Assembly: GCF_006345805.1 (NCBI RefSeq)
Contig: NC_043010.1
Span: forward strand, 50,530,001 to 50,594,000
Origin: Octopus sinensis
Taxonomy: Eukaryota
Direction of reading: 5' to 3'
Length of the DNA: 64,000 nt
Position numbers and translations under genes: made by a program. The notes beneath the pieces were generated by a model that was not told the DNA's origin, searched no databases, and saw nothing but the letters and a program-made list of their open reading frames with translations. Below, piece by piece: positions 4,105 through 47,374 of this stretch (the first letter of the stretch is position 1; each line of letters opens with the position of its first letter).

Positions 4105-4845
4105 AAGTAGTTAAGTCGATTACATCGACCCTAGTACTAAATTGGTACTTGTTTTATCGACGCCGAAAGGATGAAAGGTAAAGTCGACTTCGGTGGAATT
4201 TAAACTCAGAACGTAAAGACGGACGAAATACCTATTTCTTTACTACCCACAAGAGGCCAAACACAGAGAGGACAAACAAGAACAGATAAACGGATTAAGT
4301 CGATTATATCGACCCTAATCAGTAATTTGTATTTATTTAATCGACCCCGAAAGGATGAAAGGCAAAGTCGACCTCGGCGGAATTTCAACTCAGAACGTAG
4401 CGGCAGACGAAATACCTATTTCTATTTCTTTACTACCCACAAGGAGCTAAACACAGAGAGGACGAACAAGGACAGACAAATGGATTAAGTCGATTATATC
4501 GAACCCAGTGCGTAACTGGTACTTATTTAATCGACCTCGAAAGGATGAAAGGCAAAGCCGACCTCGGCGGAATTTGAAATCAGAACGTAACGGCAGACGA
4601 AATACCGCTAAGCATTTCGCCCGGCGTGCTAACGTTTCTGCTAGCTCGCCGCCTTAAATACCTATTTCTTTACTACCCACAAGGCGCTAAACACTGAAAG
4701 GACAAACAAGGACAGACAAACGGATTAAGTCGATTACATCGACCCCAGTGCGTAGCTGGTAGTTAATTTATCGACCCCGAAAGGATGAAAGGCAAAGTCG
4801 ACCTCGGCGGAATTTGAACTCACAACGTAACGGCAGACGGAATAA
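4105..4845 (-). repeat. Head-to-tail array of four SINE-B units
   Basis: Core repeated four times at about 180-250 bp spacing with a recurrent junction GAAATACC/TATTTC. Confidence 0.85.
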
Positions 4846-5966
4846 GGGTAAAGACCCCCTTCGGTCATGAATGACCATGGGATTGCACCTAGAAAGTTAC
4901 CCTCCTAGACACAAGTCCGGGCAAGGTTGTTTATGGAAGGCCAGCAGTCGCCCATGCATACCAGCCTCCCCTCTCCACGCCACCAGTGTTATCCAAGGGA
5001 AAGACAAAGGTCGACACAGCTTGGCACCAGTGACGTCGCAACTCATTTCTACAGCTGAGTGAACTGGAGCAACGTGAAATAAAGTGCCTTGCTCGAGAAC
5101 ACAACACGCAGCCCGGTCCGGGATTCGAGCTCACAACCTCACGATCGTAAGCTCGACGCTCTAACCACTGAGCCAGGAATATGGCTACGCATTTCGCCCG
5201 GCGTGTTAACGTTTCTGCCAGCCCACCGCTTTTAAAAGCTGTCATTTTGTCTAGCTCACTCACGATTCTGTTAATTTGCTACCTAAACGAGGGTTAAGTA
5301 ATTTTTAATATGAAGAAAATGATTATAACTTACATTTTTGTGTGTGGATCGATGAGAAGCACAAAATTAATACAACGCAAATAAAGCTCTTCATTTTCTT
5401 TTTCTATAGCTTCTTGTAACTTATGAAATTCTTCTTCTTCTTCTTCTTCTCCTTCCTTTTCTTCCTTTTCTCTCACCAAGCAGTAAGGGACAATGAAATA
5501 ACAAAATGGCTCGAACTGAAGCTATATCTGAGGCTTTTATATATACTTCCGCGACGAATAAATAAATAAATAAATACAAAAAATATACACAGTAAATACA
5601 AAAATTAAATATTCGAAATACACTCAAAAACAATGAAATAAAAACGTGCCTGTTTAAATGTTAATACGTCTGCGTGTAGGTGAATGTGTGTGTGTGTGTG
5701 TGTGCATATATGTATGTAATTATGCATGTGCATATTTATGTACACACACACATACACATATTCACACACACACACACACACACACGCAGTCACTTTAACA
5801 TTTGAACAGACATGCTTTATGTTGTTTTGTGTGTATTTTGTTTAAGTCTCGTGTTACTATGTATATTTTTATTTATTTATTCATCACCAAAGCATACATA
5901 CATACATACATACATACACATACAGACACACCTATCAGTGTGAGAGTAGGAGTATGTATGTGTGCT

Positions 5967-7235: not shown

Positions 7236-8860
7236 TATGTATGTATGTCAAGTCACTTTCGAGTGCTACTGGTAACATGTAACCCTGTACAACCTGTTGC
7301 ATGGTCGGATCGTCGGCGACTAAACCGGCAACCCCACCAAGCTTGCTTGGTGTGGAGAGTGTTTATTGGACACCCTGCGGGATGAAAAACAAAACCCGTC
7401 AAAGGGCGGCGGAACTCTTGAGAGTCAACGGCCATCCAAATTGTAATTTGATTCATAACATCTCTCGATATATTCTTTTCTACTCTAGGCACAAGGCCTG
7501 AAATTTTGGGGGAGGGGGCCAGTCGATTAGAGCGACCCCAATACGGAACTGGTACTTAATTTATCGATCTCGAAAGGATGAAAAGCAAAGTCGACCTCGG
7601 CGGAATTTGAACTCAAAACGTAAAGATAGACGAAATACCTATTTCTTTACTACCCACAAGGGGCTAAACAGAGAGGGGACAAACAAGGATAGACAAAGGG
7701 ATTAAGTCGATTATATCGACCCCAGTGCGTAACTGGTACTTAATTTATCGACCCCGAAAGGATGTAAGGCAAAGTCGACCTCGGTGGAATTTGAACTCAG
7801 AACGTAGCGGCGGACGAAATACGGCTACGCATTTCACCCGGCATGCTAACGTTTCTGCCAGCTCTCGATATATCATACACACAATGAATAAGAGAAGTCA
7901 GAATCAGTTAATAAGAATTCTAAGGGAAAAGGTTGGAAATATGGAATTCACTAAGAGAATATTCCATTACACATTAGAAGACTATATATTAGGAATAATT
8001 ATATTCCAAATTTGGATAAGATGAAATAAAGCGAGTTTAAAAAAATAAAAAATATATAATAAAATCCCAGATGAAAGAGACTAAATTAAATCAGAGACGA
8101 AGGACTCTACTTAATATTTACCACTAAAAGATGATCTTGTAACAAGATTCTAGTATATTTGATGGTGGGAAATGCTTGTGTAGGGTCATGAAAATTTACC
8201 TGGTATATTTGCGACTACACGGGACATGTATCTCTCTCTTTTCTCTTTTACTTGTTTCAGTCATTTGACTGCGGCCATGCTGGAGCACCGCCTTTAATCG
8301 AGCAACTCAACCCCGGGACTTATTCTTTGTAAGCCCAGTACTTATTCTATCGGTCTCTTTTCGCCAAACCGCTAGGTGACGGGGACATAAACACACCAGC
8401 ATCGGTTGTCAAGCAATGCTAGGGGGACAAACACAGACACACAAACATACACACGCATACATATATATATATATACATATATCCGACAGGCTTCTTTCAG
8501 TTTCCGTCTACCAAATCCACTCACAAGGCATTGGTCGGCCCGAGGCTATAGCAGAAGACACTTGCCCAAGGTGCCACGCAGTGGGACTGAACCTGGAACC
8601 ATGTGGTTGGTAAGCAAGCTATTTACCACACAGCCACTCCTGCGCCTATGGAGCATTATACCATATAATCTGTCTTTAGAGAGGTCTCCGCTTTCTAGGA
8701 CTAATAGCATAGTTAATATTGCCGCATATATCCCCTTTTATAAAAATATTATTAATGCTCTGAGGAGAAACAAGTTCAGCCTTCAGGACTGAATCACGTT
8801 ATTTTTTATTCTATTTCTACGTTCTTTGCTCTCTCTGTTATTGCTACTACTATTCCTGAT

Positions 8861-9280: not shown

Positions 9281-9968
9281 TTCCTGATACCCTTATCATC
9301 GTAATTATCGTTGTTAATGATTTTATTATCTATATCATTATTTCTATTTATTTTTATCTGCATACTGCCTGTTGATTATAATGGTCCTGTTAATGCTAAT
9401 TCTTTTTTGGTTCGCATAGCTGCGCACACTCCTTACTATTATACCTATTATTCAGAGTTTTTCCATTGTTATTTACTATTCTTCCTGCACTGCCTTTCTT
9501 ATTAACAATAACATCTTGTTAGGAACAATCCTGTGAGGAACATTAAATTCCATAAATTCTCTATGAGACGGAATGAACATTTAAGGAAGTTACACTTCTG
9601 AATTAAGGAACTAAGAATGAAATCCTATCCACGCTGATAAGACTTAATAATTTGGAGTTCAATTTTTTTAAATATCTTGTTAGGAAGGGTCTTTTGAAGT
9701 ATTATAAAATTATCTCTAAGGCTATTTTTTAAAAATATTAATAGGGTGAGAGAAAAGATATAGTGGATAGACTGACAATAAGCAGAAGACAGGACTGAGC
9801 CGTATAAACTCAGAGTACCACAAATATATTTGAAGGCTCACAAGCTTAACTTCACAACTAATTCTATAGTTTGATTAATATTCATTCACAATCAGACATA
9901 GGTAAAACAAATGAATTAGTTATTGATAGGTAATACCTCCACATAGAAGAAAAATTAAATTAAATTTG

Positions 9969-20850: not shown

Positions 20851-21915
20851 TAAGCACTTTCCACATTGAAGGAAGGGTCCTGATAACTAGACGAAGATGA
20901 AGTAGATAACATTCAGTTTGAACTCTCATAGATTGGTTTTCGTTTTTGCTTGTTGAGTCTGGAGAAAGGAGAAATGCCTGTCTCTTGCAGGCCCTTTAAA
21001 ACTGGTGAGCTTGACAATAATAATATTTCCTTTAAAACCATTGCAGATCAATACCTGCAAGAAAGACATGAGCAGGGAAAAGATTCCAGAAGGCTGATGT
21101 CATGGGGAAGAAGGACTGGACATAGTGGTTAGTGCAAAACTAAGAGTGTTGTATGCACAAAAAGTGATTGATAGGTGAAAAGATGAATGTGTCAGGGAGT
21201 ACTTGAGTTGTAGAGATATGAGCTCTGAGGAATGGAGGCCATTATAATAACAATAGAAAAGAATGGAAAACAAAAGTTGATAAGGAGTCGGTCAATCAAT
21301 TATTTAATACCATTCACTTGGTGCTTGAACTGTCTTTAGTGCAATCCACTCTGTTGCAGGCATTTGAGTGGTGTCTTTGGTTTGAAATTAGCTTCCTCAC
21401 TTCTTCACACCTGTCTTAGAGGAAGATTTTAAAAGGACCAGGAGCACTGCCCTTCCTTTTCTGTTTAAGCCATTTGTAAAAAACAAAAGGCAGGGTAAGA
21501 AAGAACTGGGGAAAAAGACTGTTTAGTACAGGGTCTGAAGAGGAGTGTAACAGGATGTGGGGAGGTAGAAGGAAGAGAAACAGGTACATTGGTGCTCATC
21601 ATCATTATCATCGTTTAATGTTCGTTTTTTTTTCATGCTGGCATGGGTTGGATGGTTTGACAGAAAGTGGTAAGTCTCAAGGCTGTGCTGAGCTCCAGTG
21701 TCAACTCTGGCATGTTTTCTATAGCTGGATGCCCTTCCTAACACTAGACACAGAGACATTAGTGGTGTTTCAGCAAATCTAGTGAAGGGTGGACCAATCC
21801 AGTAGTGGTAAAAGGGGCAAAGAGAATACACAGCTTTACAGTGGTTAAATGGTGTACAGTGTTGATGAGTAAAAGCTTACTTGTTATTAGAAGGACAGCC
21901 TTCTTTTGCTAATGT

Positions 21916-22258
21916 ATTTCTTTACTGTCCACAAGGGGGCTAAACATAGAGGGGACAAACAAGAACAGACAAAGGGATTAAGTCGATTACATCAACCCCA
22001 GTGGGAAACTGGTACTTTATTTATTGACCCCGAAAGGATGAAAGGCAAAGTCGACCTCGGTGGAATTTGAACTGAGAACGTAACGACAGACGAAATACGG
22101 CTACGCATTTCACCCAGCGTGCTAACGTTTCTGCCAGCTCGCCGCCTTCACAGCTGAATGGCTTTTCCCCAGTGTGCTTGCTGTGATGGATTTGTAATTT
22201 GCCCTTCGTGTCAAATGTCCACAGACATCACAACTGTATGGTTTTCCTCCAGGATGTG
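21916..22258 (-). mobile_element. Chimeric retroposon: zinc-finger fragment fused to a full SINE-B, within a 13-bp TSD
   Basis: cttttgctaatgt at 21903-21915 and 22259-22271; 22148-22258 resembles CDS 22911-23025; SINE-B at 21916-22147. Confidence 0.8.
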
Positions 22259-22366
22259 CTTTTGCTAATGTGTTACATAAAGTGCATGTGTACATATAAC
22301 GGGTGCATCATACGAAAATTTACAGTGTAGTAGTAGTCCAATGAGGATTTAATGAAGAGGTGAATA

Positions 22367-23446
22367 TTAGTTCGATTCAGTCAAAGAAAATGACACACTC
22401 TCACTGAATGTGACATGTGGGAAGTCAGCCTCATGTGTTTTTAAATGAGTTCTCAGCCTGCTGTTTGTCATGAACGTTTTCCCGCAAATGTCACAACAAA
22501 AATGTTTGTCATCTATGTGTATGCGATAATGTCTTTTCAAGTGAGCACTGTCACGAAACCCTTTACCACACATCTCACAGTAAAACGATTTCTCCCCCGT
22601 GTGAGTCTTAATATGTCTCCTTAGGTTATCATTACGTATGAAGTTTCTACCACATACGTCACAATGGAATGGTCTCTCTGTGGTGTGAATCTTTAAGTGC
22701 CTGTTTAACTGGCTGTTGGTAATAAAACCTTTCCAGCAGATTTTGCAATAAAAGGGTCTTTCCCCTGTATGGGTCCTGACATGAATTTTCAAATCTTCGT
22801 TTTTCAGAAAATCTTTGCCACAACTTTTACAATGGAAACATTTTATACCTGTGTGTATTCTTCGATGTTTTGACAAGTGACCCTTAGTTGCAAAATCTTT
22901 ATCACATATTTCACAGCTGAATGGCTTTTCCCCTGTGTGCTTTCTATGATGGATTTGTAATTTGCCCTTCGTGTCAAAACAGTGTCCACAGACATCACAA
23001 CTGTATGGTTTTCCTCCAGTATGGGCTTTAGCATGGCGTTTCAAGTTGTTAGCATCAGAAAAGGTTTGGCCACAAAACACACAATCAAATGGTCTCCCAC
23101 CTACGTGTATCTTTCTGTGTAAATTCAGTTTACGACTGTTACTAAACTCATGTCCACAAATTTCACAGCATAATTCTTTGAATTCGTCATGGACTTTTAA
23201 GTGTTGTTTCAAGTGGTTAATATCAGAGAATCTGTAATGGCAAATGTTACACAGGTAGCAGTTAAGTCTCGTATGAGTTACACTATGCTTTCTGATTTTA
23301 TTCTCAGTCAGGTATATTTTACCACATATCTCACAAGGGAACAAGTCTTGGGATTCAGAATTGGTTTGAGTAAAGTCATCATCAGACACATCACTGCATG
23401 AAGGAAGCAGTGTGACATTATTATCAGTGAGGAGCTCCATTTCCAT
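22367..23446 (-). CDS. C2H2 zinc-finger protein, 11 tandem fingers, single coding exon, 359 aa
   Basis: Eleven C-x2-C-x12-H-x3-H repeats with TGEKP-type linkers and a short acidic N-terminus; no KRAB or BTB domain seen. A strong acceptor (ctttatctttccag) at 23550 implies a spliced 5' UTR. Confidence 0.93.
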   Translation of the reverse strand: MEMELLTDNNVTLLPSCSDVSDDDFTQTNSESQDLFPCEICGKIYLTENKIRKHSVTHTRLNCYLCNICHYRFSDINHLKQHLKVHDEFKELCCEICGHEFSNSRKLNLHRKIHVGGRPFDCVFCGQTFSDANNLKRHAKAHTGGKPYSCDVCGHCFDTKGKLQIHHRKHTGEKPFSCEICDKDFATKGHLSKHRRIHTGIKCFHCKSCGKDFLKNEDLKIHVRTHTGERPFYCKICWKGFITNSQLNRHLKIHTTERPFHCDVCGRNFIRNDNLRRHIKTHTGEKSFYCEMCGKGFRDSAHLKRHYRIHIDDKHFCCDICGKTFMTNSRLRTHLKTHEADFPHVTFSESVSFSLTESN

Positions 23447-24537
23447 GGCAACAAAGCAGCATTAGATTAAACTTTAATTAACTGGTAACTGGTCAGGTTG
23501 GTAAGTAAGGCATCCAAATTATTTCCCTAAAAAAGCCATTGTTTTGGAACTGGAAAGATAAAGATTACATGTTATTCACTAGTATATTTGTGTATGTGTG
23601 TGTGTGATTTTAAAAGTTTATGTATATATGTATGTATCATCATCATCATCGTTTAACGTCCGTTTTCCATGCTAGCATGGATTGGACGTATGACTGAGGG
23701 CTGGCGAACCAGATGGCTGCACCAGGCTTCAATCTTGATCTGGCAGAGTTTCTACAGCTGGATGCCCTCCCTTCCTAACGCCAACCACTCTGAGAGTGTA
23801 GTGGGTGCTTTTACGTGCCACCGGCACAGGGCCAGTCAGGCGGCACTGGCAACGACCTCACTCGAATCTTTTACACATGCCACCGGCGCGGGTGCCAGTA
23901 AGGCGATCTGGTAACGATCACGCTCGAATGGTGTTTTTTACATGCCACCAGCACGGAGGCCAGATAGCCACTCTGGCAACAATCACGCTCGGATGGTGTT
24001 CTTAATACCCTACTAGCACGGTATGTATGTATGTATATATATTACTCTTATACAAGAATGTTGTTGACAGTGACTTTGAAGTTTCAACCAGCTAAGTTGT
24101 TTTTCAACTAAAGCAGGATGATGGCTTGTATAAGAATAATAAATTTGTACTCTACAAAAGTATAAAGTAACCCGTAATTGATTAATGTAAAATTGTTTAT
24201 ATTTTAACTAAACATAAAAACAAACATTAATATACATGTGTGTGATGTGCAGGAGTGGCTGTGTGTTAAGAAGCTTGTTTCCTAATCACATGGTTCTGGG
24301 TTCAGTTCCACTGCATGGCACCTTGGGCAAGTGTCTTCTGCTATAGCCCCGGGCTGACCAAAACTGTGTGAGTGGATTTGGTAGATAGAAACAGAAAGAA
24401 GCCCATCATATATATATATATATATGCATGTATGTATTTGTTATTTTGTGTCAGTTTGTCCCCAACATCACTATATATATATATACACACACACACATAT
24501 ATATTATTATTTATATACATATGTGTATATATATATA

Positions 24538-24568
<31 letters not shown>

Positions 24569-25521
24569 ATAACATATTTATATATATACATATACAAACA
24601 TATACATATATACAAATTTATATATACCTTTCACTTTGACTTTGTTTCGTAATAGCATTCTGAAAAAATGCATATTTTTGAAATGACATTTTGCCAAAAT
24701 ATGTTTTTGATGTGTACATTTGTAATGAGTAAATACAATTGAGAATTTTTCGGTTGTCTTTTTTTTTTTTTTGTTGGGGAATTTCGGATTGTTCAACCTC
24801 AAACTTACCCCACCACAACTTTGTATCAATTTCGATAACTTGAGCATTTTTCATTTCTAATAATAGAAAGATTTATATATTTGAAACGTTAACTTAAATT
24901 TCATTGGGAAAACACGCCTTTTTTTATTGTCAGAAAGTTATGCAGAATCAAGGCACAAGGCCCGAAATTTGGGGGGAAGGGGGCCAGTCGATTACATCGA
25001 CTCCAGTACAGAACTGGTACTTAATTTATCGATCCCAAAAGGAATGAAAAGCAAAGTCGACCTCGGCGGAATTTGAACTCAGAATGTAATGACAGACGAA
25101 ATACTGCTAAGCATTTCACCCGGTGTGCTAACGTTTCTTATTTCTTTACTACCCACAAGGGGCTACACACAGAGGGGACAAACAGGACAGATAAAGGGAT
25201 TAAGTCGATTACATCGATCCCAGTGTGTAACTGGCACTTAATTTATCTACCCCGAAAGGATGAAAGGCAAAATCGACCTCGGCGGAATCTGAACTCAGAA
25301 CGTAGCGGCAGACGAGATAAGGCTAAGCATTTCGCCCGGCGTGCTTAACGTTTCTGCCAGCTCGCCACCTTTAACAAAGTCAGGGGGCACCAAATTGTAG
25401 TTACACCTGCTCCTGTAAACTTAGTAAAGTGGGCGCTACATATCTAATAAAACAAAGGTTTTTCTTTTTAATTAAAATCAGTGAAGTTCAATAAACTTTA
25501 GGATAATTATTACCAAAATTA

Positions 25522-33384: not shown

Positions 33385-33621
33385 TCATGCTGAAGCTTCA
33401 CCCAGCAAACGTCTCTGTGCCAGTTCATTATTAGGATTCAACTCAATCAGTTCGTTGCTGGAGACAGCCAAATCTTGAACTGATACACGTCCTCTCTGTT
33501 GCATATACTTTGCTACGGACTGCAATTCATCTCTGGTGATGTAGATGAACTTTCCACGGTCATCCATGACTCCAGTCAAAGTGCCGTCACCAAGGAGACA
33601 CTGCACCCGATCAATTGCTTC
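33385..33621 (-). CDS. DDRGK1: DDRGK1 last coding exon (EAIDRVQ...[17 protein letters not shown]...RGRVSV...GEASA*)
   Basis: Acceptor ttctcag; DDRGK signature; stop at 33385. Confidence 0.97.
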
Positions 33622-36600
33622 CTGAGAAAGAGATCACATTGGACACTTGAAATAGAAACGGTCAACCAATTTTTGAAGAAAGTCGATTTGGGGAAATGAA
33701 GAAACAGAGGAAAGTATGTATGGTATTTCAGTCAATGTGGAGTGAGATTGGGGCTGGAGTAAGGTAATATGACAGTAGTGTAAGATTGTGGTGAGTTGGA
33801 ATGAATTGAATGTGGGTGTGGTTAGGTTGGATGAACCGAGTGTGGAGTTGTAGAAGGGTTGGATGAACTGAGTGTGGGATTGTAATGGAATGGGATGAAG
33901 TGAGTGTAGGATTGGAGTGGTCGTGGTAAAGTTGTATAAAGTGAGTGTAGGATTGGAGTGTGTGGTTGTGGTGAGATTGGACGAAGCTTGAATGGGGTTG
34001 GATGACGTGAGTGAGGGAGGGAGGGACTAGATTGAGGAAGAGTGAAATGAAGGTTTATAATGTTTATAAATCTGCTGTTTAATCTTTGGAAGCAAAAAAC
34101 ATGGTGGCAGCAGTGTCAATTGTAATGTTAATTATTGTGATAATGATGATAGTAATATTCATAGTGAGGGTAGAAAGATCATCATAGAGGTGGTTATATT
34201 GATGATGATGATGATGTAATGAAGAGGTTGGAGCCAGACTTGCTTAATACACAAGGCAGTAATATATTAAGAATCAGAAAGAGCTGTTAACCCTACCTGT
34301 GTTTTTATTGAGAAATGGTGAGCCAAATCTTCCAGCATTACAACTTTGATCTCCTGAAATATGCAATAAAATATTGATTAGTGGCAGGGGAAGAAGTGGG
34401 GAGAGAGGGTTTAGATTTAAGAGTCAGTTTTGTAATAACGAGAAAAGGATAAAAAAAGCAGTCAATTACTGACCCTGGAGAGATGAAAAATACCTCACCC
34501 TGATATCATCTAAAGCAAAGGTTCTCAACCAATTTTTATCTATGGACACCTTTGATTACTATTTTACAGCTATAGTGGACCCACATAGCCATTCAATGTT
34601 TAAAAATTAGTTTTATAGAAACTGCTTTCAAATTTCTTATTTTGTTTTTTGTTTTACATATTAACTTGTGTAGGTTGAACTATGCAAAACATTAGAGAAA
34701 GAAACCCAGCTGTTTCTTGCAAAGCAAAATTTTTCATAGGTTCTTAGAATATTATTGTGGATCCCCAATTTACTATTTTGTTGCGGACCCCACAAGATTT
34801 TATATAGACCATCAGGGGCCACATGGACCCCAGTTGAGAACCCTGATGAGGAGATGAGTCACAGCTATCTTTTGCAGTCAAGCATCCATCATCGATGAGA
34901 TCAAGGAATGTTGAAATCATGTGATCTGGTGGTTTCAGTATTGAAGGTGCAGAGATTTATCTCCCCACCAGCAATATAAACAAGAGTGCATTTTGTACCA
35001 AAAGCCAATATGAGAGTTTCTCTCATGGTATCTACCACAGTATAGCTTGTTCTAATAGAACATCAATGTTTCAGTGGGGATGAGTATTAGCTCTTGGTAT
35101 TAATACTGCCTCTGTCACTAATATATATCTTTTAACAAGCTCACTGGGTAATCGCAACACCAATGCCAGTTCTCGTATTGTTTTTCTATATATTGCTGGT
35201 GCAGAGAGGAGTCCTTGCTATCTCTAGCAGTTCAGCAACCATCACTGACAAGACCAAAGAAGGTGTGGCAGAAACACAGGCACAAAGACACACACATACA
35301 GATATAAATATATATATGCAAGCATGAAAGACAGATGTTAAATGACGATGGTGATGTTGATATACATACATACATATACGGGGGTCTTCTTTCAGTTTCT
35401 GTCTACCAAATCCACTCACAAAACTTAGATTAGCCTAAGGCTATAAAAGGTACTTGCCCAAGATGCCATGCAGTGGGACTGAACCTGGAATCATGTGGTT
35501 CAGAAGCAAGCTTCTTACCACACAGTCACACATTAAATTTAACAACACTCATCATCATCATCATAATCATTTAACATCCATCTTCCATGCATGCATGGAT
35601 AGGATGGTTCACAAGAGCCAGCCAGGTAGGAAAACAACCCTATGCCACTGTGTCTGTTTTAGCAAGGTTTTTACGGCTGGATGCTCTTCCTAACCTAACA
35701 CTATGAGATTAATTTTTTTTTTTTTTAAAGTACTTTCCACATCCCACAATATAACAACTTCTATACCTCTACTCTTCAGACAGTGTTCTGGTTTTCCCAA
35801 AGCTCTACTTACCTTGATGTAATTGATAAATTCTTCCAGCAGAGATTGTGACTGTAAGAAAAGAAGAGAAATATTTAACACCGATTTAACATCTTGGGAC
35901 AAGGCCGGCAAGTTTGGGGGAGGAGGTAAGTCAATTACATTGACCCCAGTGTTCAACTGGTACTTATTTTATCGACCCTAAAGGATGAAAAGCAAAATTG
36001 ACCTCAGTGGAATTTAAACCCAGAATGTAAAGAGGAAAGAAATGCCACTAAGCATTTTGCCTCACAGGCTAACAACTCTGCTAGCTCATCGCCTCAAAAT
36101 CTTATAATAATACTGCTTGTCATTGCATTACTTAGCCCGATGGTAATGCTTTCGTCTGATTAGAGATAAAGTGGTACAAAGAAAAGGAAAGAGAAAAGGA
36201 GGGAGGGAGAGCATCCATGACATGTGGTAGAAGGAATGTTAATTGTAAAGCTTTCACGTAATTAGCTGAAGGAAAAGAGAGAAGGGAGAAAAAGAGGATA
36301 AGACGAAGAATGAGATAGAAAGTGGGAGAAAGATAAAGCCTTTACTTTATTTGATTTCCAATGTGCATTTCTGCTTATTTTTCTTCTTACTTTCCCCTTA
36401 CATTTCCATGTGTAGTTTATATTTTCTTTTTGTAACATATTTCCATTTTATATATATATATTTACTTGGAAATGGATGCATGGCAATCAATTAATAATAA
36501 TAATAATAATATATATATATTTATTTAATCAGCCGAAATTGCGAGGATGATCCGGTTCTTGACTGAAGATTGAAGGCTTCGAATGTCCTGTCCGTGCTTT

Positions 36601-36686: not shown

Positions 36687-39600
36687 GCATATACCGGAAC
36701 AGGACGTCACCAACAGTAAACAACATGAAATACGAAAACAAATGAGTTAAATATGCAAATAACAAGAGAAAAAAAGGACAAGTAATACAAAGGATGACCC
36801 TTCATTAGTAGTCAGCTGTCTATCTACTCTCCATTTTAAGCACGCCATCACAAGAATGCACAGGCAATGGCGCCTGTGAAAAGTGTTGGTAATGGTACCA
36901 TGTAAAAAGCACTGGTGATGGTGCCACATAGAAAGCACAAGTGATGGTGCTACATAAAAAGCACCCAGTACACTCTTTAAAGTGGTTGGTTGCAGGAAGT
37001 GCATCCAGTTGTAGAAACTATGCCAGAACAAACTATGAAGCCTGGTGTGGTCCCATGGCCTTACTAGCTCGTGTCAAACTGCCCAACCCATGCCAGTATG
37101 GAATATGGACATTAAATTATGTGTGTGTGTGTGTGTGTACCCTTGTCTCGACATCATGTGATGGTTGTAAATTAGCATCCCCACCATACAAGTGATGCTG
37201 TTCGTTTCTAGTCTTATGTGAAAAATGTCTGACCATGGAGGTATTTAACTTTGTTTGGAAGCAGGTGAAGGCAGGCAACAGAAAGGGCATCCATAGAAAA
37301 TCTATCTCAACAAATTCTGTCTGATCCATGCAAGCATGGAAAAGTAGACATAAAAATGATAATAACGATGATGATTACACACACATAGACATGAAAAATT
37401 AAAAAGCTTACGTCTAAATCTGTTGCTTTTTCTTCTTCTCCTTCTTCATCTATTGTAAACTCAGCTTTCATCTTCAAATATTCTTCATGTTCTCTTTTCT
37501 GTTCTTCTTCCTTTGCTTTCTGCTGAGCAAGTGCCTGAAAAATAATAAAAATGCTAATGATAATAATGGTTTCAAATTTTGGCACAAGGCTAGCAACTTC
37601 AGGGAAGGCGTTAAGTTCATTAAATTAACCACAGTGTACAACTGGTAACAACAACAATAATGATAATAATGGTTTCAAATTTTGGCACAAGGCTAGCAAC
37701 TTCAGGGAAGGCGTTAAGTTCATTAAATTAACCACAGTGTACAACTGGTAACAACAACAATAATGTTAATAATGGTTTCAAATTTTGGCACAAGGCCAGC
37801 AACTTCAGGGAAGGCGTTAAGTTCATTAAATTAACCACAGTGTACAACTGGTAACAACAATAATAATGATAATAATGGTTTCAAATTTTGGCATAGGGCA
37901 GTAATTTTAGTGGAAGGGGATCAATCAATAACACTGACACAAATTCTTGACTGGTACTTTATTTAATTGACCCTCAAAAAGATGAAAAGCAAAGTTCACC
38001 TTGCCAGCTCAAATGGTTTCCATTTTCAGCACATAACCAGCAATTTTCCAGGGAGGGGTTTAGTTGATGATGTCAGCCCAGTACTTGACTGATATTTAGT
38101 TTACCAACCCCTACAAGAGGATGAAAGGCATTGTTGACCCCAGCTCAAATGGTTTCAATTTTCAGCACATAACCAGCAATTTTCCAGGGAGGGGTTTAGT
38201 TGATGATGTCAGCCCAGTACTTGACTGATATTTAGTTTACCAACCCCTACAAGAGGATGAAAGGCATTGTTGACCCCAGCTCAAATGGTTTCAATTTTCA
38301 GCACATAACCAGCAATTTTCCAGGGAGGGGTTTAGTTGATGATGTCAGCCCAGTACTTGACTGATATTTAGTTTACCAACCCCTACAAGAGGATGAAAGG
38401 CATAGTTTTGATCCCAGTGGAATTTGAACTCAGAACGTAGAGAGCCTGAACAAATACTGCAAGGTATATTTTTCCAATGATCTATGGATTCTGCCGGTTC
38501 ATATCCTTAACAATAATAATTCTTTCTTTCTAATTTTGGCACAAAGCTAGCAATTTTAAAAGAGAAAGTATGTTGATTACTTAATCCCCAGATGCCATGC
38601 AGACAATTTGGTATGGCTGACTGGGCATTCATCTTGTTTTGGCCACTATACTTTTTAGCACTGAAACAAATACACGTGCATACACACACATACGTGTGCA
38701 CAAAAGTATACACATAGATAGAAAGAGTAAGAGAGGTAGGGAAAGACATTACAGTTTATCAAATGAACTTGGTTGATATAAATAATTTCCCTCACCCCCA
38801 AAATATAAAGGGAGATAACTTGCACTCCATCAGTTATGTGACGTGGTCAGTCCTTTGAATTACTTGTTTTTGCCAGCTTAGTAGACTGGAACAACACGAA
38901 ATAAAGCATTTCAATCAAGAACATAACTGCTGGGAACTGAGATCATGACCTTACAATTCTGAGCCTGATACACTAATCACAAAGCCATGTACCGATTGTG
39001 CCACAGGGGCAGCTACTTATGCATACCTTTCCTTCTTGGGACACAAAACTCTGCTTGCGAAGACCTGTTGAGGTAAGTGAAATCAGAATCAAAATTGCTC
39101 AAAAATCAATGGAAATTGTAGTTGTGATACCAGTGCTGGTGGCACGTAAAAGAACCATCCGAACGTGGCCGTTGCCAGCGCAGCCCCGACTGGCCTCCGT
39201 GCCGGTGGCACGTAGAAGTCACCAACTGATTGTGGCCGTTGCCAGCTTCGCCTAGCACGTAAAAAGCACCCACTACACTCATGGAGTGGTTGGCGTTAGG
39301 AAGGGTATCCAGCTGTAGAAACACTGCCAGATCAGACTGGGCCTGGTGCAGCCTCCTGGCATCCCAGACCCCAGTCAAACCGTCCAACCCATGCTAGCAT
39401 GGAAAGCAGACGTTAAACGATGACGATGATGTACCCACACATAGAGAAAATATACTCACACACATAAACAGAGAAGGAACTAGGGAGAGAACGGAAAAAA
39501 ACATTAAAACACCTGATGTCAAATAAGTAGGCATAGAACTGGTGATGCCAAAATGCCTGTGCCAAAACTTCTCCAGGCCTTGTGATCAAACAGCCAGACT

Positions 39601-44745: not shown

Positions 44746-45496
44746 GACATGTTTATTTCAGTTTCCATCTACCAAATCCACTCAAAAGGCTTTGATCAGC
44801 CTGAAGCTATAGTAGGAGACAGTTGCCTATGGTGTCATGCAGAGGGACTGCACCCCTAGAACGATGTGGTTGGGTCATTAGCTTCTCACCACATGGCCAC
44901 ACCTGCACCTATGCAAGCTCCTTCAGAAAGACTTTCGGCATTCCGTCGATATAACTCGACAAAATTAAAACATTTCACTTCAGATATTTCCGTGGAAGCA
45001 AATTTGCGGATTTTACATACACACACGAAACAGGTAAGAACAAATATACAAGACTTTTTTCCTCAAGTTTAAATAAAATGAGACATTGCTGGCATAATTT
45101 CGTTATATCTATACTCCACAACCACGGAAAATACCCGAAGTAAAATGTTATGATTTTGTCGAGTTATATCGAAGGAATGCCGAAAGACTGTGAAATCATC
45201 AGGTTTACAAAATTAACTAAAATATTAATGAATCACGAGATATTAAACGTTGTTCAATCGAATAGTAACACAAATAAACAAATATCAACATATGTGTATG
45301 GTGCAACATATGTTTACCTGTGACGGAACATCTTACCTCTAACTGGTTGCAGTGGCTCGCTAGAGCTGAACCATCGGTTAATGAGAGTGAGTATCAAGAT
45401 AGTTAACAGCAATAACCCAACTAATACAAGGTAAACCGTCTCTCGGGGCCAAATCGACTGCTTATTGCCGGTGAAACTCTGACCGTGGTCAGCCAT
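33385..45496 (-). CDS. DDRGK1: DDRGK domain-containing protein 1 (UFBP1), 8 coding exons, 981 nt, 326 aa
   Basis: Exons 45337-45496, 43477-43581, 40477-40634, 39890-39991, 37412-37534, 35813-35851, 34297-34353 and 33385-33621 all have GT/AG sites and join in one open frame. The product has an N-terminal TM anchor, KIGAKK...KLQEK, a charged coiled coil and a PCI-like C-terminus with the literal [13 protein letters not shown] signature. Confidence 0.96.
34297..34353 (-). CDS. DDRGK1: DDRGK1 coding exon 7 ([19 protein letters not shown]), 57 nt; absent from the ORF track
   Basis: Acceptor atttcag, donor gtaggg; conserved KVV.LEDLA..F..KTQ. Confidence 0.93.
34516..34845. mobile_element. hAT-type MITE (DDRGK1 intron 6)
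   Basis: GGTTCTCAACC ... GTTGAGAACCCTG termini; same family as 40745. Confidence 0.75.
35813..35851 (-). CDS. DDRGK1: DDRGK1 coding exon 6 ([13 protein letters not shown]), 39 nt
   Basis: Acceptor cttacag, donor gtaag; conserved LL.EFINYIK. Confidence 0.93.
37412..37534 (-). CDS. DDRGK1: DDRGK1 coding exon 5 ([32 protein letters not shown]...)
   Basis: Acceptor ttttcag, donor gtaag; conserved [14 protein letters not shown] motif. Confidence 0.95.
37556..37895. repeat. 103-bp unit x3.3 tandem repeat next to the exon 5 acceptor
   Basis: Unit starts at 37561, 37664, 37767 and 37870; near-identical. Confidence 0.95.
38005..38402. repeat. 136-bp unit x3 tandem repeat
   Basis: Unit starts at 38005, 38141 and 38277; near-identical, SINE-B-tail-like. 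Confidence 0.95.
39890..39991 (-). CDS. DDRGK1: DDRGK1 coding exon 4 ([34 protein letters not shown])
   Basis: Acceptor tttacag, donor gtaag, 102 nt, phase 0; coiled coil. Confidence 0.92.
40216..40434. mobile_element. piggyBac-type MITE (DDRGK1 intron 3)
   Basis: TTAA-CCCTTTAGTATT ... AATACTAAAGGG-TTAA. Confidence 0.88.
40477..40634 (-). CDS. DDRGK1: DDRGK1 coding exon 3 (DDAPVNV...[23 protein letters not shown])
   Basis: Acceptor cttgcag, donor gtaaag; conserved KIGAKK motif. Confidence 0.92.
40745..41014. mobile_element. hAT-type MITE with perfect 8-bp TSD
   Basis: TSD atttagtc on both sides; CAGGAGTTCTCAAC ... GCTGAAAACCACTG. Confidence 0.88.
41860..42350 (-). mobile_element. Non-autonomous Helitron-like element in partial head-to-tail tandem; plus-strand copy at 59800-60180
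   Basis: 5' TC..TATATAAAA..CTGTCTGTCTG start and GC-rich 3' end finishing CTCGT; no TIR or TSD. Class is inference. Confidence 0.55.
42737..42942. mobile_element. Penelope-like terminal remnant with a 119-bp fold-back (42824-42942) and minimal hammerhead-like motif
   Basis: 59-bp arms with 1 mismatch; the arm reads C(C/G)GACGA-ACGGCAACGG-GAAA-CTCAGAG-TA-ACAG; flanked by (TA)n. Confidence 0.55.
43477..43581 (-). CDS. DDRGK1: DDRGK1 coding exon 2 ([34 protein letters not shown])
   Basis: Acceptor tatttgaag, donor G|gtaag, 105 nt, phase 1-1; basic linker as expected. Confidence 0.8.
44923..45193. mobile_element. MITE with about 70-bp TIRs in DDRGK1 intron 1
   Basis: ctttcggcattcc.tcgatataactcgacaaaat / attttgtcgagttatatcgaaggaatgccgaaag. 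Confidence 0.75.
45337..45496 (-). CDS. DDRGK1: DDRGK1 coding exon 1 (MADHGQ...[23 protein letters not shown]...PVR), TM anchor
   Basis: ATG at 45496, hydrophobic helix, donor G|gtaag; phase 1 matches exon 2. Confidence 0.85.
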
Positions 45497-45801
45497 CTTT
45501 AAATCGTGGCGACACAATTGAGTAGGTCGAAAACTGGAATGGATAAACGGAACGAATGATTATATTTATTGACAAACGAAAAACGGAAATGAATGTTACG
45601 CTCACAATATATTTCACATCATATGGTGATAACCTTATTATATGAATATTTTTAGACTTTATCAACATATGTATAAAATATTTTAAAATATATAAACATT
45701 ATACAGAAATAGTAATATTAGTTTTGGTTATGTTTTACGTTTCTTGGGGTTTCCAAGTTAGATAATTCCTACGACCATCAAGCAAACAAGAACCTCTACG
45801 T
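45497..45801. promoter_or_regulatory. DDRGK1 promoter/5' UTR, candidate bidirectional promoter
   Basis: Repeat-free, CpG-retaining interval between divergent ATGs 528 bp apart. Position-based inference. Confidence 0.55.
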
Positions 45802-47374
45802 CAGTGGTTCTCAACCAATTTTTAATAATGGAACCTTCTGATTACTATTTTATTGTAGTGGAGCCATCTGATGTTTAAAAAACTATCCTCTGTGTGAAAA
45901 GTCTGGCTGCATACACGTTAGCATATGTCAGGTGCATACAACTGACAACACAGTTAATTAAGATTTATTCAGTGAGTTCTATTCAACACATATTTACAAT
46001 CAGCAGAATCATTATTAACTTTAGATGGCTCGCAGGCGAGGTGAACAAATTGGTGAGAGAGATAGACTGGCAATACTTCTACGCTACCAGCAAATTAAAG
46101 ATGGGGTCGCAAATGAAACAGTGAGTGATCTTTGCAATGCCTTTCAAGTAGACCGCAATATACCAGCGCGAATTTATAAAAATGCAACTCTTCATGGAAC
46201 AATACAGCCAAAACAGCGTTCTGGGCGACCAAGCCTTGTCAAAAATGCTGCTTTGCAAGAAAGAATGGTCAATGCTATTCGTGAAAGGCGTACTGCAACC
46301 AGTAGACAACTTGGTAGAGAATTGGGATGCTCTAACAGTACAGCAAACATAATGAGGCATATTCTAAAATTTTGTGCTCAAGGCCGTGTGAGTAGACCTC
46401 CTTTATCTGCCCTAAACATGGAAAAACGTTTGCAGTTTTGTCAGGAACATCCAAATGTTAGACCACATACAGGTTTCTTAGATGAAAAATGGTGGCATAC
46501 ATTTTGGGGTAGCAAGAAGATTTACAGACGGTCAACATCACCGCATATTTATGAACACCCACCATGTCATGTTCCTAAAGCTATGTTTATCGCTGTGATT
46601 AGCAGAGACGTGCCTGGTGGAAAAGTTGGCTTTTGGCCAGTTGCTGAACAAAGACAATACGTACGGAACTCTCGATATCATCAACGCGGTGATCCTTATT
46701 GGAGTGATTCAAGCTGCGATGGTGCTTTTTTCTGCCGTACACTGGATGTTGATATTTTACCAGCCTGTGAAGAACATGGGATCCGCATATTGCAAATGGA
46801 CAATGCGAGACCACATATTGTCAACAATTTGGATGCTTCTATTGCCGAAGTAATGGCTCGTCACCCGACAGTGCAACTTTTATTGCAACCGCCCCAAAGC
46901 TCGGATTTAAATCCATTAGAGGAAGGCATTTTCAAAGTTTTGGTCGATAAAGTTGAACTGAAAAACCCTACAACGCGGCATGAATTGCACGAAGCCGTCT
47001 TGCAGTCTTGGGAAGAGCTATCTGAGCGGAAAATTCGTGGATGTATTCAACATCAAACTCGTGTTCGGCGTCAAATAGTTGACTGTCGTGGGGGTAACAG
47101 ATTCGTGTAATAAATTTTGTGTTTATTTTTGTTTCATAATATATTTTGTTTTTCATATGTGTAGTTTGAGCTATACAAAAATTTGAAAATTAGCTTTTTC
47201 TTGCAATAAATACATCTAAATCTAGACTTTTTCCTTAGCCTTTAAAATAAGACTGTTTACTATTTTGTTTACATGGACCCCAAAAAATCCTGTATGAAAT
47301 AGATAGAGAAGAAAGAAAATCATAGTGATGGTGCCTGGTTTTATTTTCATACGGATCCTGGTTGAGAAGCACTG
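45802..47374 (+). mobile_element. hAT (Charlie-like) MITE shell enclosing the transposase ORF
   Basis: TIRs CAGTGGTTCTCAACCA / TGGTTGAGAAGCACTG match 15/16; 8-bp flanks ctctacgt / ctttatgt. Both halves align to the simple MITE copies at 34516 and 40745. Confidence 0.8.
46025..47110 (+). CDS. Intact IS630/Tc1/mariner-superfamily transposase-like protein, DD39E catalytic spacing, 361 aa
   Basis: N-terminal HTH region with SGRP, then FLDEKWW, KAMFIAVISR, GKVGFWP, QMDNARPH, QPPQSSDLNPLE and a GGN C-terminus. There are 39 residues between the second D and the E. No stops or frameshifts; AATAAA overlaps the stop. Confidence 0.92.
   Translation: MARRRGEQIGERDRLAILLRYQQIKDGVANETVSDLCNAFQVDRNIPARIYKNATLHGTIQPKQRSGRPSLVKNAALQERMVNAIRERRTATSRQLGRELGCSNSTANIMRHILKFCAQGRVSRPPLSALNMEKRLQFCQEHPNVRPHTGFLDEKWWHTFWGSKKIYRRSTSPHIYEHPPCHVPKAMFIAVISRDVPGGKVGFWPVAEQRQYVRNSRYHQRGDPYWSDSSCDGAFFCRTLDVDILPACEEHGIRILQMDNARPHIVNNLDASIAEVMARHPTVQLLLQPPQSSDLNPLEEGIFKVLVDKVELKNPTTRHELHEAVLQSWEELSERKIRGCIQHQTRVRRQIVDCRGGNRFV

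What the first reader, a model, noticed from the sequence alone, without database searches (positions are those of the whole stretch)
21903..22271. TSD-bounded zinc-finger/SINE chimeric retrocopy just downstream of the zinc-finger gene
Seen: a 13-bp direct repeat (cttttgctaatgt) flanks, on the minus strand, about 110 nt matching finger 5 plus linker of the adjacent gene (22911-23025), fused directly to a full-length SINE-B. It starts about 100 bp past the stop codon. It differs from the source by a 4-bp deletion and a few substitutions, at least two synonymous (ACA/ACT, CAT/CAC). The 5' junction has microhomology (GCAAAAGCACAT versus GCTAAAGCCCAT). Established: LINE RT template switching and 5' transduction create such chimeras (for example U6-L1). 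Inference: the RT copied the SINE and then jumped onto a ZNF mRNA, or onto a paralogue containing the SINE. This would be a retro-mechanism for shuffling individual finger units in the expanded cephalopod C2H2 repertoire.
Basis: partly seen in the sequence, partly recalled or inferred. Interest (0 to 1): 0.75.

Follow-up and report, generated by a model that had tools for sequence, protein, structure and literature searches.

The report
SINE insertion carrying a zinc-finger gene piece
A mobile SINE element that landed just after an octopus zinc-finger gene also carries a 112-base copy of that gene's fifth finger, most likely because the copying enzyme jumped onto a nearby second template; it is a clean example of a known kind of chimeric insertion, and the copied piece is non-functional.

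Summary
The window is Octopus sinensis chromosome DNA. An exact 13-bp direct repeat (21903-21915 and 22259-22271) encloses two parts, listed here in minus-strand order:
- A 112-nt copy of the end of finger 4, all of finger 5 and the start of finger 6 of the adjacent 11-finger C2H2 gene. It is 95% identical to the gene and has a 4-bp frameshifting deletion.
- A full-length 233-bp SINE, joined base-for-base at its consensus first nucleotide.

Both junctions show microhomology. AA is shared at the ZNF/SINE joint. At the 5' joint, 6 of 7 bases match, exactly at the 3' end of the target overhang, where target-primed reverse transcription predicts it.

The same window holds another composite bounded by target-site duplications (SINE plus SINE, 12-bp duplication) and several SINE-to-SINE joints. 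This retroposon system therefore changes template often.

A one-step chimeric insertion is the best reading. However, the insertion lies 95 nt past the stop codon of the very gene it copies, so the second template was local. It was either that gene's nascent RNA (favoured) or its DNA, and the sequence cannot tell them apart.

The idea of a finger-shuffling mechanism is unsupported, because the piece is non-functional and cannot be mobilised with the SINE.

No cephalopod sequence was reachable, so the tests for an empty site and for a paralogous donor could not be run.

The parts
22259..22271 (-). Target-site duplication, copy at the 5' side of the insert (minus strand reads ACATTAGCAAAAG). Its last 7 nt, GCAAAAG, match the ZNF source GCTAAAG at 6 of 7 positions. 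This is the microhomology at the 5' joint.
22149..22258 (-). ZNF-derived fragment. With the shared AA at 22147-22148 it is 112 nt long. It covers the last residues of finger 4, the linker, finger 5, the linker and the first 4 residues of finger 6. It has 5 substitutions beyond the microhomology zone and a 4-bp deletion that breaks the frame.
22147..22148 (-). AA shared by the ZNF sequence (TGTGAA) and the SINE's first bases (AAGG). This is a 2-nt microhomology at the point where the template changed.
21916..22148 (-). Full-length SINE of 233 bp. Its head is AAGGCGGCGAGCTGGCAGAA and its tail is ...GTAAAGAAAT. It differs by 6.1% from a rough consensus of 8 copies. Its 3' end stops about 7 nt short of the longest tails (GAAATAGGTATTT).
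21903..21915 (-). Target-site duplication, copy at the 3' side of the insert, directly abutting the SINE tail.
22910..23032 (-). Source segment in the adjacent gene (codons 139-179). It lies on the same strand, 767 nt upstream of the copy.
22367..23446 (-). Intronless 359-aa reading frame with 11 C2H2 fingers. It is the only ZNF gene in the window and is recorded as a called gene on Octopus sinensis CM016872.1.

Best explanation
This is a single retroposition event by target-primed reverse transcription.

1. A LINE-encoded endonuclease and reverse transcriptase nicked the DNA 95 nt downstream of the ZNF stop codon.
2. The bottom-strand end ...GCTAATGT-3' primed copying of a SINE RNA from near its 3' end to its very first base.
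3. The enzyme did not stop there. It continued on a second template carrying ZNF fingers 5-6, landing where AA is shared, and copied 112 nt.
4. The new DNA then paired with the 13-nt top-strand overhang ...GCAAAAG-3' at the imperfectly matching GCTAAAG. This primed the second strand and produced the 13-bp duplication.
5. The copied gene is the one next to the nick, so the second template was local. It was most likely the gene's own nascent or read-through transcript.

Shown: the one-unit insertion, the full-length SINE and both microhomologies.
Inferred: the template switch itself, its local origin and RNA as the template.

The product is an inert, frameshifted fragment in the gene's 3' flank.
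For: - An exact 13-bp duplication encloses the composite and no repeat encloses the SINE alone.
- The SINE 3' end abuts one copy of the duplication. The ZNF homology ends inside the other copy, at the 3' end of the predicted top-strand overhang.
- The SINE begins at its consensus first base, with AA shared with the ZNF sequence.
- Duplications of 12-16 bp flank two other SINE insertions in the window.
- A second one-event composite lies at 7462-7873. It is a SINE plus a 5'-truncated SINE inside a perfect 12-bp duplication, and its 5' joint also shows microhomology.
- At 4655/4663 a full-length SINE head is joined directly to another SINE's 3' terminus. The joint GAAATAGGTATTTCG recurs three times with different 3' partners.
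- The fragment is sense to sense with the SINE, as an RNA template requires.
- Only one ZNF gene and one fragment exist in 64 kb, and the match is specific to finger 5.
- Both amino-acid changes (T>P in the linker, R>S in the H-x3-H stretch) depart from the usual finger pattern (my reading of C2H2 fingers), which fits decay on the fragment side.
- Literature: template switching and RNA ligation are the recognised routes to same-orientation chimeric insertions (10.1101/2025.02.02.635956). Microhomology-mediated attachment of the 5' end is an established model (PMC2912911). An RTE-clade LINE is expressed in Octopus vulgaris (PMC9115989).
Against: - Nothing distinguishes an RNA template from a DNA template.
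- The landing site on the second template is internal. It is not an RNA 3' end as in the classical U6/L1-type chimeras.
- Five of the six differences from the adjacent gene are at third codon positions. The probability is 0.018 if all changes were random decay of the fragment, and 0.11 if the gene also drifted at synonymous sites. This leans mildly towards a functional paralogue or an allele as donor.
- Three of the six differences lie in the first 13 aligned bases.
- No empty site, orthologue or genome-wide junction search could be done.
- Germline transcription of the gene is assumed.
Confidence: 0.5

Rival explanations
1. The same one-step insertion, but the 112-nt extension was copied from the neighbouring gene's DNA. 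The free 3' end of the SINE cDNA invaded the ZNF gene 0.77 kb away at the AA microhomology. It was extended by the reverse transcriptase or a repair polymerase, as in synthesis-dependent strand annealing or microhomology-mediated template switching. It then rejoined the target overhang.
For: - The source lies 767 nt away on the same chromosome. Short-range templated insertions typically draw on nearby DNA (established knowledge).
- The microhomologies of 2 nt and 6 of 7 nt suit this route equally well.
- There is no feature specific to RNA. The stretch has no splice junction, none of the six changes is A>G as editing would give, and there is no poly(A).
Against: - The sense orientation is guaranteed with an RNA template but has only an even chance with DNA.
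- The other composites in the window join SINE transcripts end to end, which shows jumps between RNAs in this system.
- This route needs single-stranded access to duplex DNA.
Confidence: 0.28
2. A chimeric RNA that already existed was retroposed. There are two versions. In the first, a transcript from a paralogous ZNF gene with this SINE inserted after codon 4 of a finger was read through, primed at the SINE tail and 5'-truncated (5' transduction). In the second, a ZNF mRNA fragment was ligated to the SINE RNA before reverse transcription.
For: - A SINE inserted into an exon would also give a full-length SINE flush against ZNF sequence.
- The excess of third-position, mostly synonymous differences fits a functional paralogue as donor.
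- RNA ligation before retrotransposition has been demonstrated for U6/L1 (PMC6789731).
Against: - The product would then have landed by chance 95 nt from a gene whose finger 5 is 95% identical. In a gigabase-sized genome that is very unlikely.
- There is no other ZNF gene or fragment in the 64-kb window.
- Reverse transcription would have to start at a SINE tail lying inside a longer mRNA.
Confidence: 0.12
3. Two unrelated events: an older local DNA duplication of finger 5 into the 3' flank, followed by an independent SINE insertion next to it. The 13-bp repeat would then be coincidence.
For: About one 13-bp direct repeat spaced 50-500 bp apart is expected by chance somewhere in the window (my calculation from the base frequencies).
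Against: - The repeat copies sit exactly at the SINE's 3' end and at the end of the ZNF homology. The probability of recurrence within 500 bp is about 1.7e-5.
- The SINE alone has no duplication of its own.
- The ZNF homology stops exactly at the SINE's first base.
- No further ZNF homology exists in either flank.
Confidence: 0.04
4. An assembly artefact in the long-read O. sinensis assembly, such as a chimeric read or a collapsed repeat.
For: None was found. The only support is that a 4-bp indel and scattered substitutions are the kind of error long-read assemblies can carry.
Against: An artefact would not produce an exact target-site duplication, a SINE joint precise to the base and microhomology where the insertion mechanism predicts it.
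Confidence: 0.03

Closest known systems
Bipartite chimeric retrocopies made by LINE reverse transcriptase, such as U6/L1, U3/L1, 5S/L1 and Alu/L1 in mammals and the MINE chimeras in Magnaporthe
   Same: - Two unrelated sequences are fused head to tail in the same orientation.
- One target-site duplication encloses both.
- The 3' partner carries the tail that the reverse transcriptase recognises.
- The recognised routes are template switching during target-primed reverse transcription or prior RNA ligation (10.1101/2025.02.02.635956; PMC2104539; PMC6789731).
   Different: - In the classical cases the 5' partner is a complete small RNA whose own 3' end accepts the jump, and the 3' partner is 5'-truncated. 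Here the 3' partner (the SINE) is complete. The 5' partner is an internal 112-nt piece of a coding sequence.
- The donor gene is next to the insertion site rather than elsewhere in the genome.
Microhomology-mediated 5'-end attachment of L1 and Alu insertions (Zingler et al. 2005 model, cited in PMC2912911)
   Same: Target and insert overlap at the 5' joint, exactly at the 3' end of the top-strand overhang. Here the overlap is 6 of 7 nt. A 3-nt or longer overlap is seen at the 7.6-kb composite.
   Different: In the model, the overlap is with the retroposon's own sequence in 5'-truncated copies. Here it is with a foreign sequence added after a full-length copy.
5' transduction by retrotransposons, and mRNA/L1 chimeras formed by cis- or trans-splicing
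   Same: Host-gene sequence is attached in sense orientation to the 5' end of a full-length element, inside one target-site duplication.
   Different: - No source locus with the same upstream flank could be looked for.
- The joint has no GT or AG splice-site dinucleotide (read from the sequence).
- SINEs are transcribed from an internal promoter, so upstream sequence is not normally part of the transcript.
End-to-end template jumping by the R2 reverse transcriptase (Bibillo and Eickbush; from my own knowledge)
   Same: On reaching the 5' end of its RNA, the enzyme continues on another nucleic acid, with little or no homology needed.
   Different: - That behaviour was shown in vitro for R2, with acceptor 3' ends.
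- The LINE partner of this octopus SINE is not identified, and the acceptor site here is internal.

Membership tests
Endonuclease-dependent insertion by target-primed reverse transcription (LINE-mobilised SINE) | A target-site duplication flanks the inserted unit. | tested here: met
   Exact 13-bp duplication at 21903-21915 and 22259-22271. Other SINE insertions in the window have duplications of 12 and 16 bp.
Endonuclease-dependent insertion by target-primed reverse transcription (LINE-mobilised SINE) | The element's 3' end lies at the boundary of the duplication. | tested here: met
   The tail ...GTAAAGAAAT abuts the duplication directly. It is about 7 nt shorter than the longest tails, GAAATAGGTATTT.
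Endonuclease-dependent insertion by target-primed reverse transcription (LINE-mobilised SINE) | An empty site with one copy of the target exists in an allele or a related species. | not testable with these tools
   - No cephalopod sequence was reachable. The exact-protein look-ups gave only the window's own contig.
- The protein searches found no cephalopod relatives.
- The 27-mers for the empty site and for the junction are absent from the metagenome collection.
Template-switch chimeric retrocopy (U6/L1 type) | Two unrelated transcribed sequences lie in the same orientation inside one target-site duplication. | tested here: met
Template-switch chimeric retrocopy (U6/L1 type) | The 5' partner ends at its own RNA 3' terminus and the 3' partner is 5'-truncated. 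| tested here: not met
   The 3' partner (the SINE) is full length. The 5' partner is internal to a reading frame at both ends, covering codons 139-179 of 359.
Template-switch chimeric retrocopy (U6/L1 type) | The second template was RNA. | not testable with these tools
   The copied stretch has no intron, no poly(A) and no A>G change.
5' transduction from a source locus | A source element exists with the identical upstream flank. | not testable with these tools
   None in the window. A genome-wide search was not possible.
Processed pseudogene (mRNA retrocopy) | It contains the mRNA's 3' end with a poly(A) tail. | tested here: not met
   The fragment ends inside finger 6 and is followed by the SINE head. 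There is no A-run.
Local segmental or tandem DNA duplication | The duplicated block has arbitrary ends, unrelated to mobile-element boundaries. | tested here: not met
   One end coincides with the SINE's first base and the other with the target-site duplication.
tRNA-derived SINE | A tRNA-related head with A and B boxes. | tested here: inconclusive
   Motifs resembling box A (TAGCACGCCGGG) and box B (GAGTTCAAATTCC) are visible in the consensus. ARAGORN and Rfam gave no tRNA call.
tRNA-derived SINE | Short, non-coding, many dispersed copies with target-site duplications. | tested here: met
   About 20 copies or fragments in 64 kb. Target-site duplications.

The most novel reading that the evidence does not exclude
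When a retroposon inserts into an actively transcribed octopus gene, its reverse transcriptase may routinely continue onto that gene's nascent RNA. Each such insertion would leave a short sense-strand duplicate of nearby exon sequence. Repeated inside the long single-exon finger arrays, this would be a recurrent way of adding or reshuffling C2H2 finger units in cis in the expanded cephalopod ZNF repertoire.
Probability: 0.08. Interest if true: 0.65.

Novelty: new member of a known kind. Interest (0 to 1): 0.3.

Why it matters
- It is an unusually well-preserved record of a retroposition event in a cephalopod. Every step can be read from the sequence: priming site, full-length copy, change of template, and microhomology-primed second strand.
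- Together with the SINE-SINE composites nearby, it suggests that the enzyme moving these abundant octopus SINEs changes template readily.
- The adjacency of donor and insertion argues that the second template was local. This point bears on how retroposition intermediates interact with the locus they enter.
- It gives no evidence that the process has built functional zinc-finger genes.

Tried and rejected
1. Orthologous or allelic locus.
   - The exact-protein look-up of the ZNF returned only its own contig, Octopus sinensis GCA_006345805.1 CM016872.1.
   - An alternative start codon and the 57-aa ORF spanning the junction are not on record.
   - The cluster look-up found neither sequence.
2. 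Paralogue donors.
   - The whole-protein search returned only vertebrate and arthropod multi-finger proteins at 29-50% identity.
   - The N-terminal 142 aa found nothing.
3. Synteny route through the neighbouring DDRGK1 gene.
   - Its last exon (33388-33633, minus strand) found no hit above 72% identity.
   - The database therefore seems to hold no cephalopod relatives, so the negative results in (2) say nothing about paralogues.
4. The 27-mers for the junction and for the empty site are absent from the metagenome collection, as expected.
5. Rfam and ARAGORN on the SINE gave no hit.
6. Cis-splicing as the origin of the ZNF/SINE joint was rejected. No GT or AG dinucleotide lies at any placement of the joint.
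7. An RNA-editing signature was rejected, because none of the six changes is A>G.
8. A decayed extra finger in the flanks was rejected. tblastn and blastn find no ZNF similarity outside about 22147-22307.
9. Other isolated 13-bp direct repeats (9513/9674 and 45283/45660) enclose unique sequence with no SINE, so they give no parallel.

Full report
**What the window is.** The 359-aa reading frame at 22367-23446 (minus strand) is recorded as a called gene on Octopus sinensis chromosome CM016872.1, assembly GCA_006345805.1. Pfam finds C2H2 zinc-finger domains throughout it, and by eye it has 11 fingers. It is the only ZNF gene in the 64 kb. The last exon of a DDRGK1 homologue lies about 10 kb upstream on the same strand. 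The region is dense with interspersed repeats.

**Checking the observation.** All elements of the finding are present.
- CTTTTGCTAATGT occurs exactly twice, at 21903-21915 and 22259-22271.
- Between the two copies, read on the minus strand, the first part is 22265-22147. It aligns to 23032-22910 of the gene: 119 aligned bases, 95.0% identity, six substitutions and one 4-bp deletion.
- The second part, 22148-21916, is a SINE with about 20 other copies or fragments in the window.
- The fragment covers codons 139-179: the last four residues of finger 4, the linker, finger 5, the linker and the first four residues of finger 6. No other finger of the gene matches at the DNA level.
- The deletion breaks the frame.
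- The repeat copy nearest the gene starts 95 nt after the stop codon.

**Is the SINE full length?** An alignment of the window's copies shows the element starting at AAGG(C/T)GG(C/T)GAGCTGGCAG. One copy, with its head at 39863, has a 16-bp target-site duplication with one mismatch that abuts AAGT directly. This fixes the true 5' end. The SINE in the finding starts at that same base. The ZNF sequence reads ...AGCTGTGAA and the SINE reads AAGGCGG..., so AA is shared by both.

**Is the repeat more than chance?** From the base frequencies, I calculate that roughly one 13-bp direct repeat spaced 50-500 bp apart is expected somewhere in the window. One search lists a few isolated ones. The bare repeat is therefore weak evidence, and what counts is its position.
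- One copy abuts the SINE's 3' end to the base.
- The other lies exactly where the ZNF homology stops.
- The chance that this particular 13-mer recurs within 500 bp is about 1.7e-5.
- No direct repeat of 6 bp or more flanks the SINE alone.

The fragment and the SINE therefore entered together.

**How the anatomy fits target-primed reverse transcription.** In the orientation of the insert, the empty site reads ...TATGTAAC|ACATTAGCAAAAG|AAGGCTG....
1. The bottom-strand primer ends ...GCTAATGT-3' and is followed directly by the complement of the SINE tail.
2. The top strand is left with a 3' overhang ending ...GCAAAAG-3'.
3. That overhang has to pair with the new cDNA to prime the second strand.
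4. The gene reads GCTAAAG exactly at the point where the fragment begins, which is 6 of 7 matches.

The first 13 aligned bases hold three of the six differences. One of these is simply the target's own base. The remaining 106 aligned bases hold the other three.

**Parallels in the same window.**
- At 7462-7873, a perfect 12-bp duplication (ATATATCGAGAG) encloses a SINE of the same tail type, truncated at its 5' end. It is joined to a 5'-truncated SINE with a different tail, and its 5' joint again shows microhomology.
- The joint GAAATAGGTATTTCG recurs three times with different 3' partners. GGTATTT is both the 3' terminus of the first tail type and an internal SINE motif.
- At 4655/4663, a full-length SINE head (AAGG...) follows directly on another SINE's 3' terminus. 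This is the same situation as in the finding, with a SINE RNA rather than ZNF sequence as the second template.
- At 25138/25139, the joint is GAAATA|AGAAACGTT, with AGAAA shared.

These joints are best explained by frequent changes of template. Insertion aimed at existing SINE tails, or unequal crossing-over, cannot be excluded for the joints that lack a clear duplication.

**Where the second template came from.** The copy lies 767 nt downstream of its source on the same strand, 95 nt past the stop codon. A pre-formed chimeric RNA, or a randomly chosen mRNA acting in trans, would have no reason to land there. Established knowledge puts the octopus genome at gigabase scale with many hundreds of C2H2 genes, so coincidence is very unlikely. 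I therefore infer a local template, either the nascent or read-through transcript of the gene or the gene's DNA. The sequence cannot separate the two. The copied stretch has no intron, there is no poly(A), and none of the six changes is A>G as RNA editing would give. I favour RNA for two reasons:
- The sense-to-sense orientation is obligatory with RNA but has only an even chance with DNA.
- The neighbouring composites show jumps between RNAs.

**A caution about the donor.** Five of the six differences are at third codon positions and four are synonymous.
- If all changes were random decay of the fragment, the probability is 0.018.
- If the gene also drifted at synonymous sites, it is 0.11.
- With a functional paralogue as donor, it is about 0.5.

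This leans mildly towards a paralogue or a divergent allele. O. sinensis heterozygosity is reported as 1.10% (PMC9795677). Six sites cannot outweigh the argument from adjacency. Both amino-acid changes depart from the usual finger and linker pattern (my reading), which fits decay of the fragment. The SINE's 6.1% distance from a rough 8-copy consensus is compatible with the fragment's 5%.

**What is not supported.** The fragment is frameshifted and lies outside the reading frame. It also lies upstream of the SINE's internal promoter, so the SINE cannot carry it onward. It is the only such fragment in the window. Nothing here shows that this process has shaped functional finger arrays.

**Comparison with what is known.**
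- Same-orientation chimeric insertions inside one target-site duplication are well documented for L1. They are attributed to template switching or to RNA ligation before reverse transcription (10.1101/2025.02.02.635956; PMC6789731; PMC2104539).
- Microhomology-mediated attachment of the 5' end is an established model (PMC2912911).
- An RTE-clade LINE is expressed in Octopus vulgaris (PMC9115989). The LINE partner of this SINE was not identified here.
- The present case differs from the U6/L1 pattern in three ways. The 3' partner is complete, the 5' partner is an internal piece of coding sequence, and the donor is adjacent.

I class it as a new member of a known kind.

**Limits.** No cephalopod sequence other than the window's own contig could be reached. 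The empty-site test, the genome-wide junction search and the search for the best donor all remain to be done.

Noticed in passing
window 7462-7873: A second composite retro-insertion bounded by a target-site duplication. A SINE truncated by about 8-11 nt at its 5' end is joined through GAAATAGGTATTTCG to a 5'-truncated SINE with a different 3' tail. The whole is enclosed by a perfect 12-bp duplication, ATATATCGAGAG (7462-7473 and 7862-7873).
   Followed up: yes
window 4111-4850: A head-to-tail array of four SINE units on the minus strand. It includes a full-length head joined directly to the preceding unit's 3' terminus (4655/4663) and two GAAATAGGTATTTCG joints. No clear flanking duplication was found. 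Its origin is open: serial template jumps, insertion aimed at SINE tails, or unequal crossing-over.
   Followed up: partly
window 24986-25371: A SINE-SINE composite with a different joint, GAAATA|AGAAACGTT, where AGAAA is shared. No target-site duplication was detected.
   Followed up: partly
window-wide (heads at 2571, 4654, 5229, 7869, 22148, 25370, 39859, 58132, 63460): All nine recognisable heads of this SINE family are on the minus strand. This strong orientation bias may reflect the local transcription units or the array structure.
   Followed up: no
window 22017-22026: This SINE copy carries AATAAATAAA in the sense of the ZNF gene, 341-345 nt after the stop codon. The family consensus reads GATAAATTAAG there. 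An ATTAAA also lies 13 nt after the stop. The insertion could have supplied an alternative polyadenylation signal.
   Followed up: no
window 46025-47110 (+): An intact 361-aa ORF with Tc1/mariner-type transposase domains. HTH_Tnp_Tc3_2 is just above the Pfam cut-off and DDE_3 is below it.
   Followed up: partly
window 21596-21742 and 23636-23939: Copies of another interspersed repeat family (about 10 copies in the window) flank the ZNF gene on both sides in the same orientation. They are about 72% identical, so they are old and probably unrelated to the finding.
   Followed up: partly
window 37555-37800 and 38004-38400: Tandem repeats with units of about 103 bp and about 136 bp.
   Followed up: no
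window 9513-9686 and 45283-45672: Isolated exact 13-bp direct repeats enclosing 148 bp and 364 bp of sequence unique in the window. They could be target-site duplications of unidentified insertions, or chance.
   Followed up: partly
window 33388-33633 (-): The last exon of a DDRGK1 homologue (...[16 protein letters not shown]...). The protein database returned no hit above 72% identity to it, and no self-hit for the ZNF. It therefore seems to hold no cephalopod relatives.
   Followed up: yes
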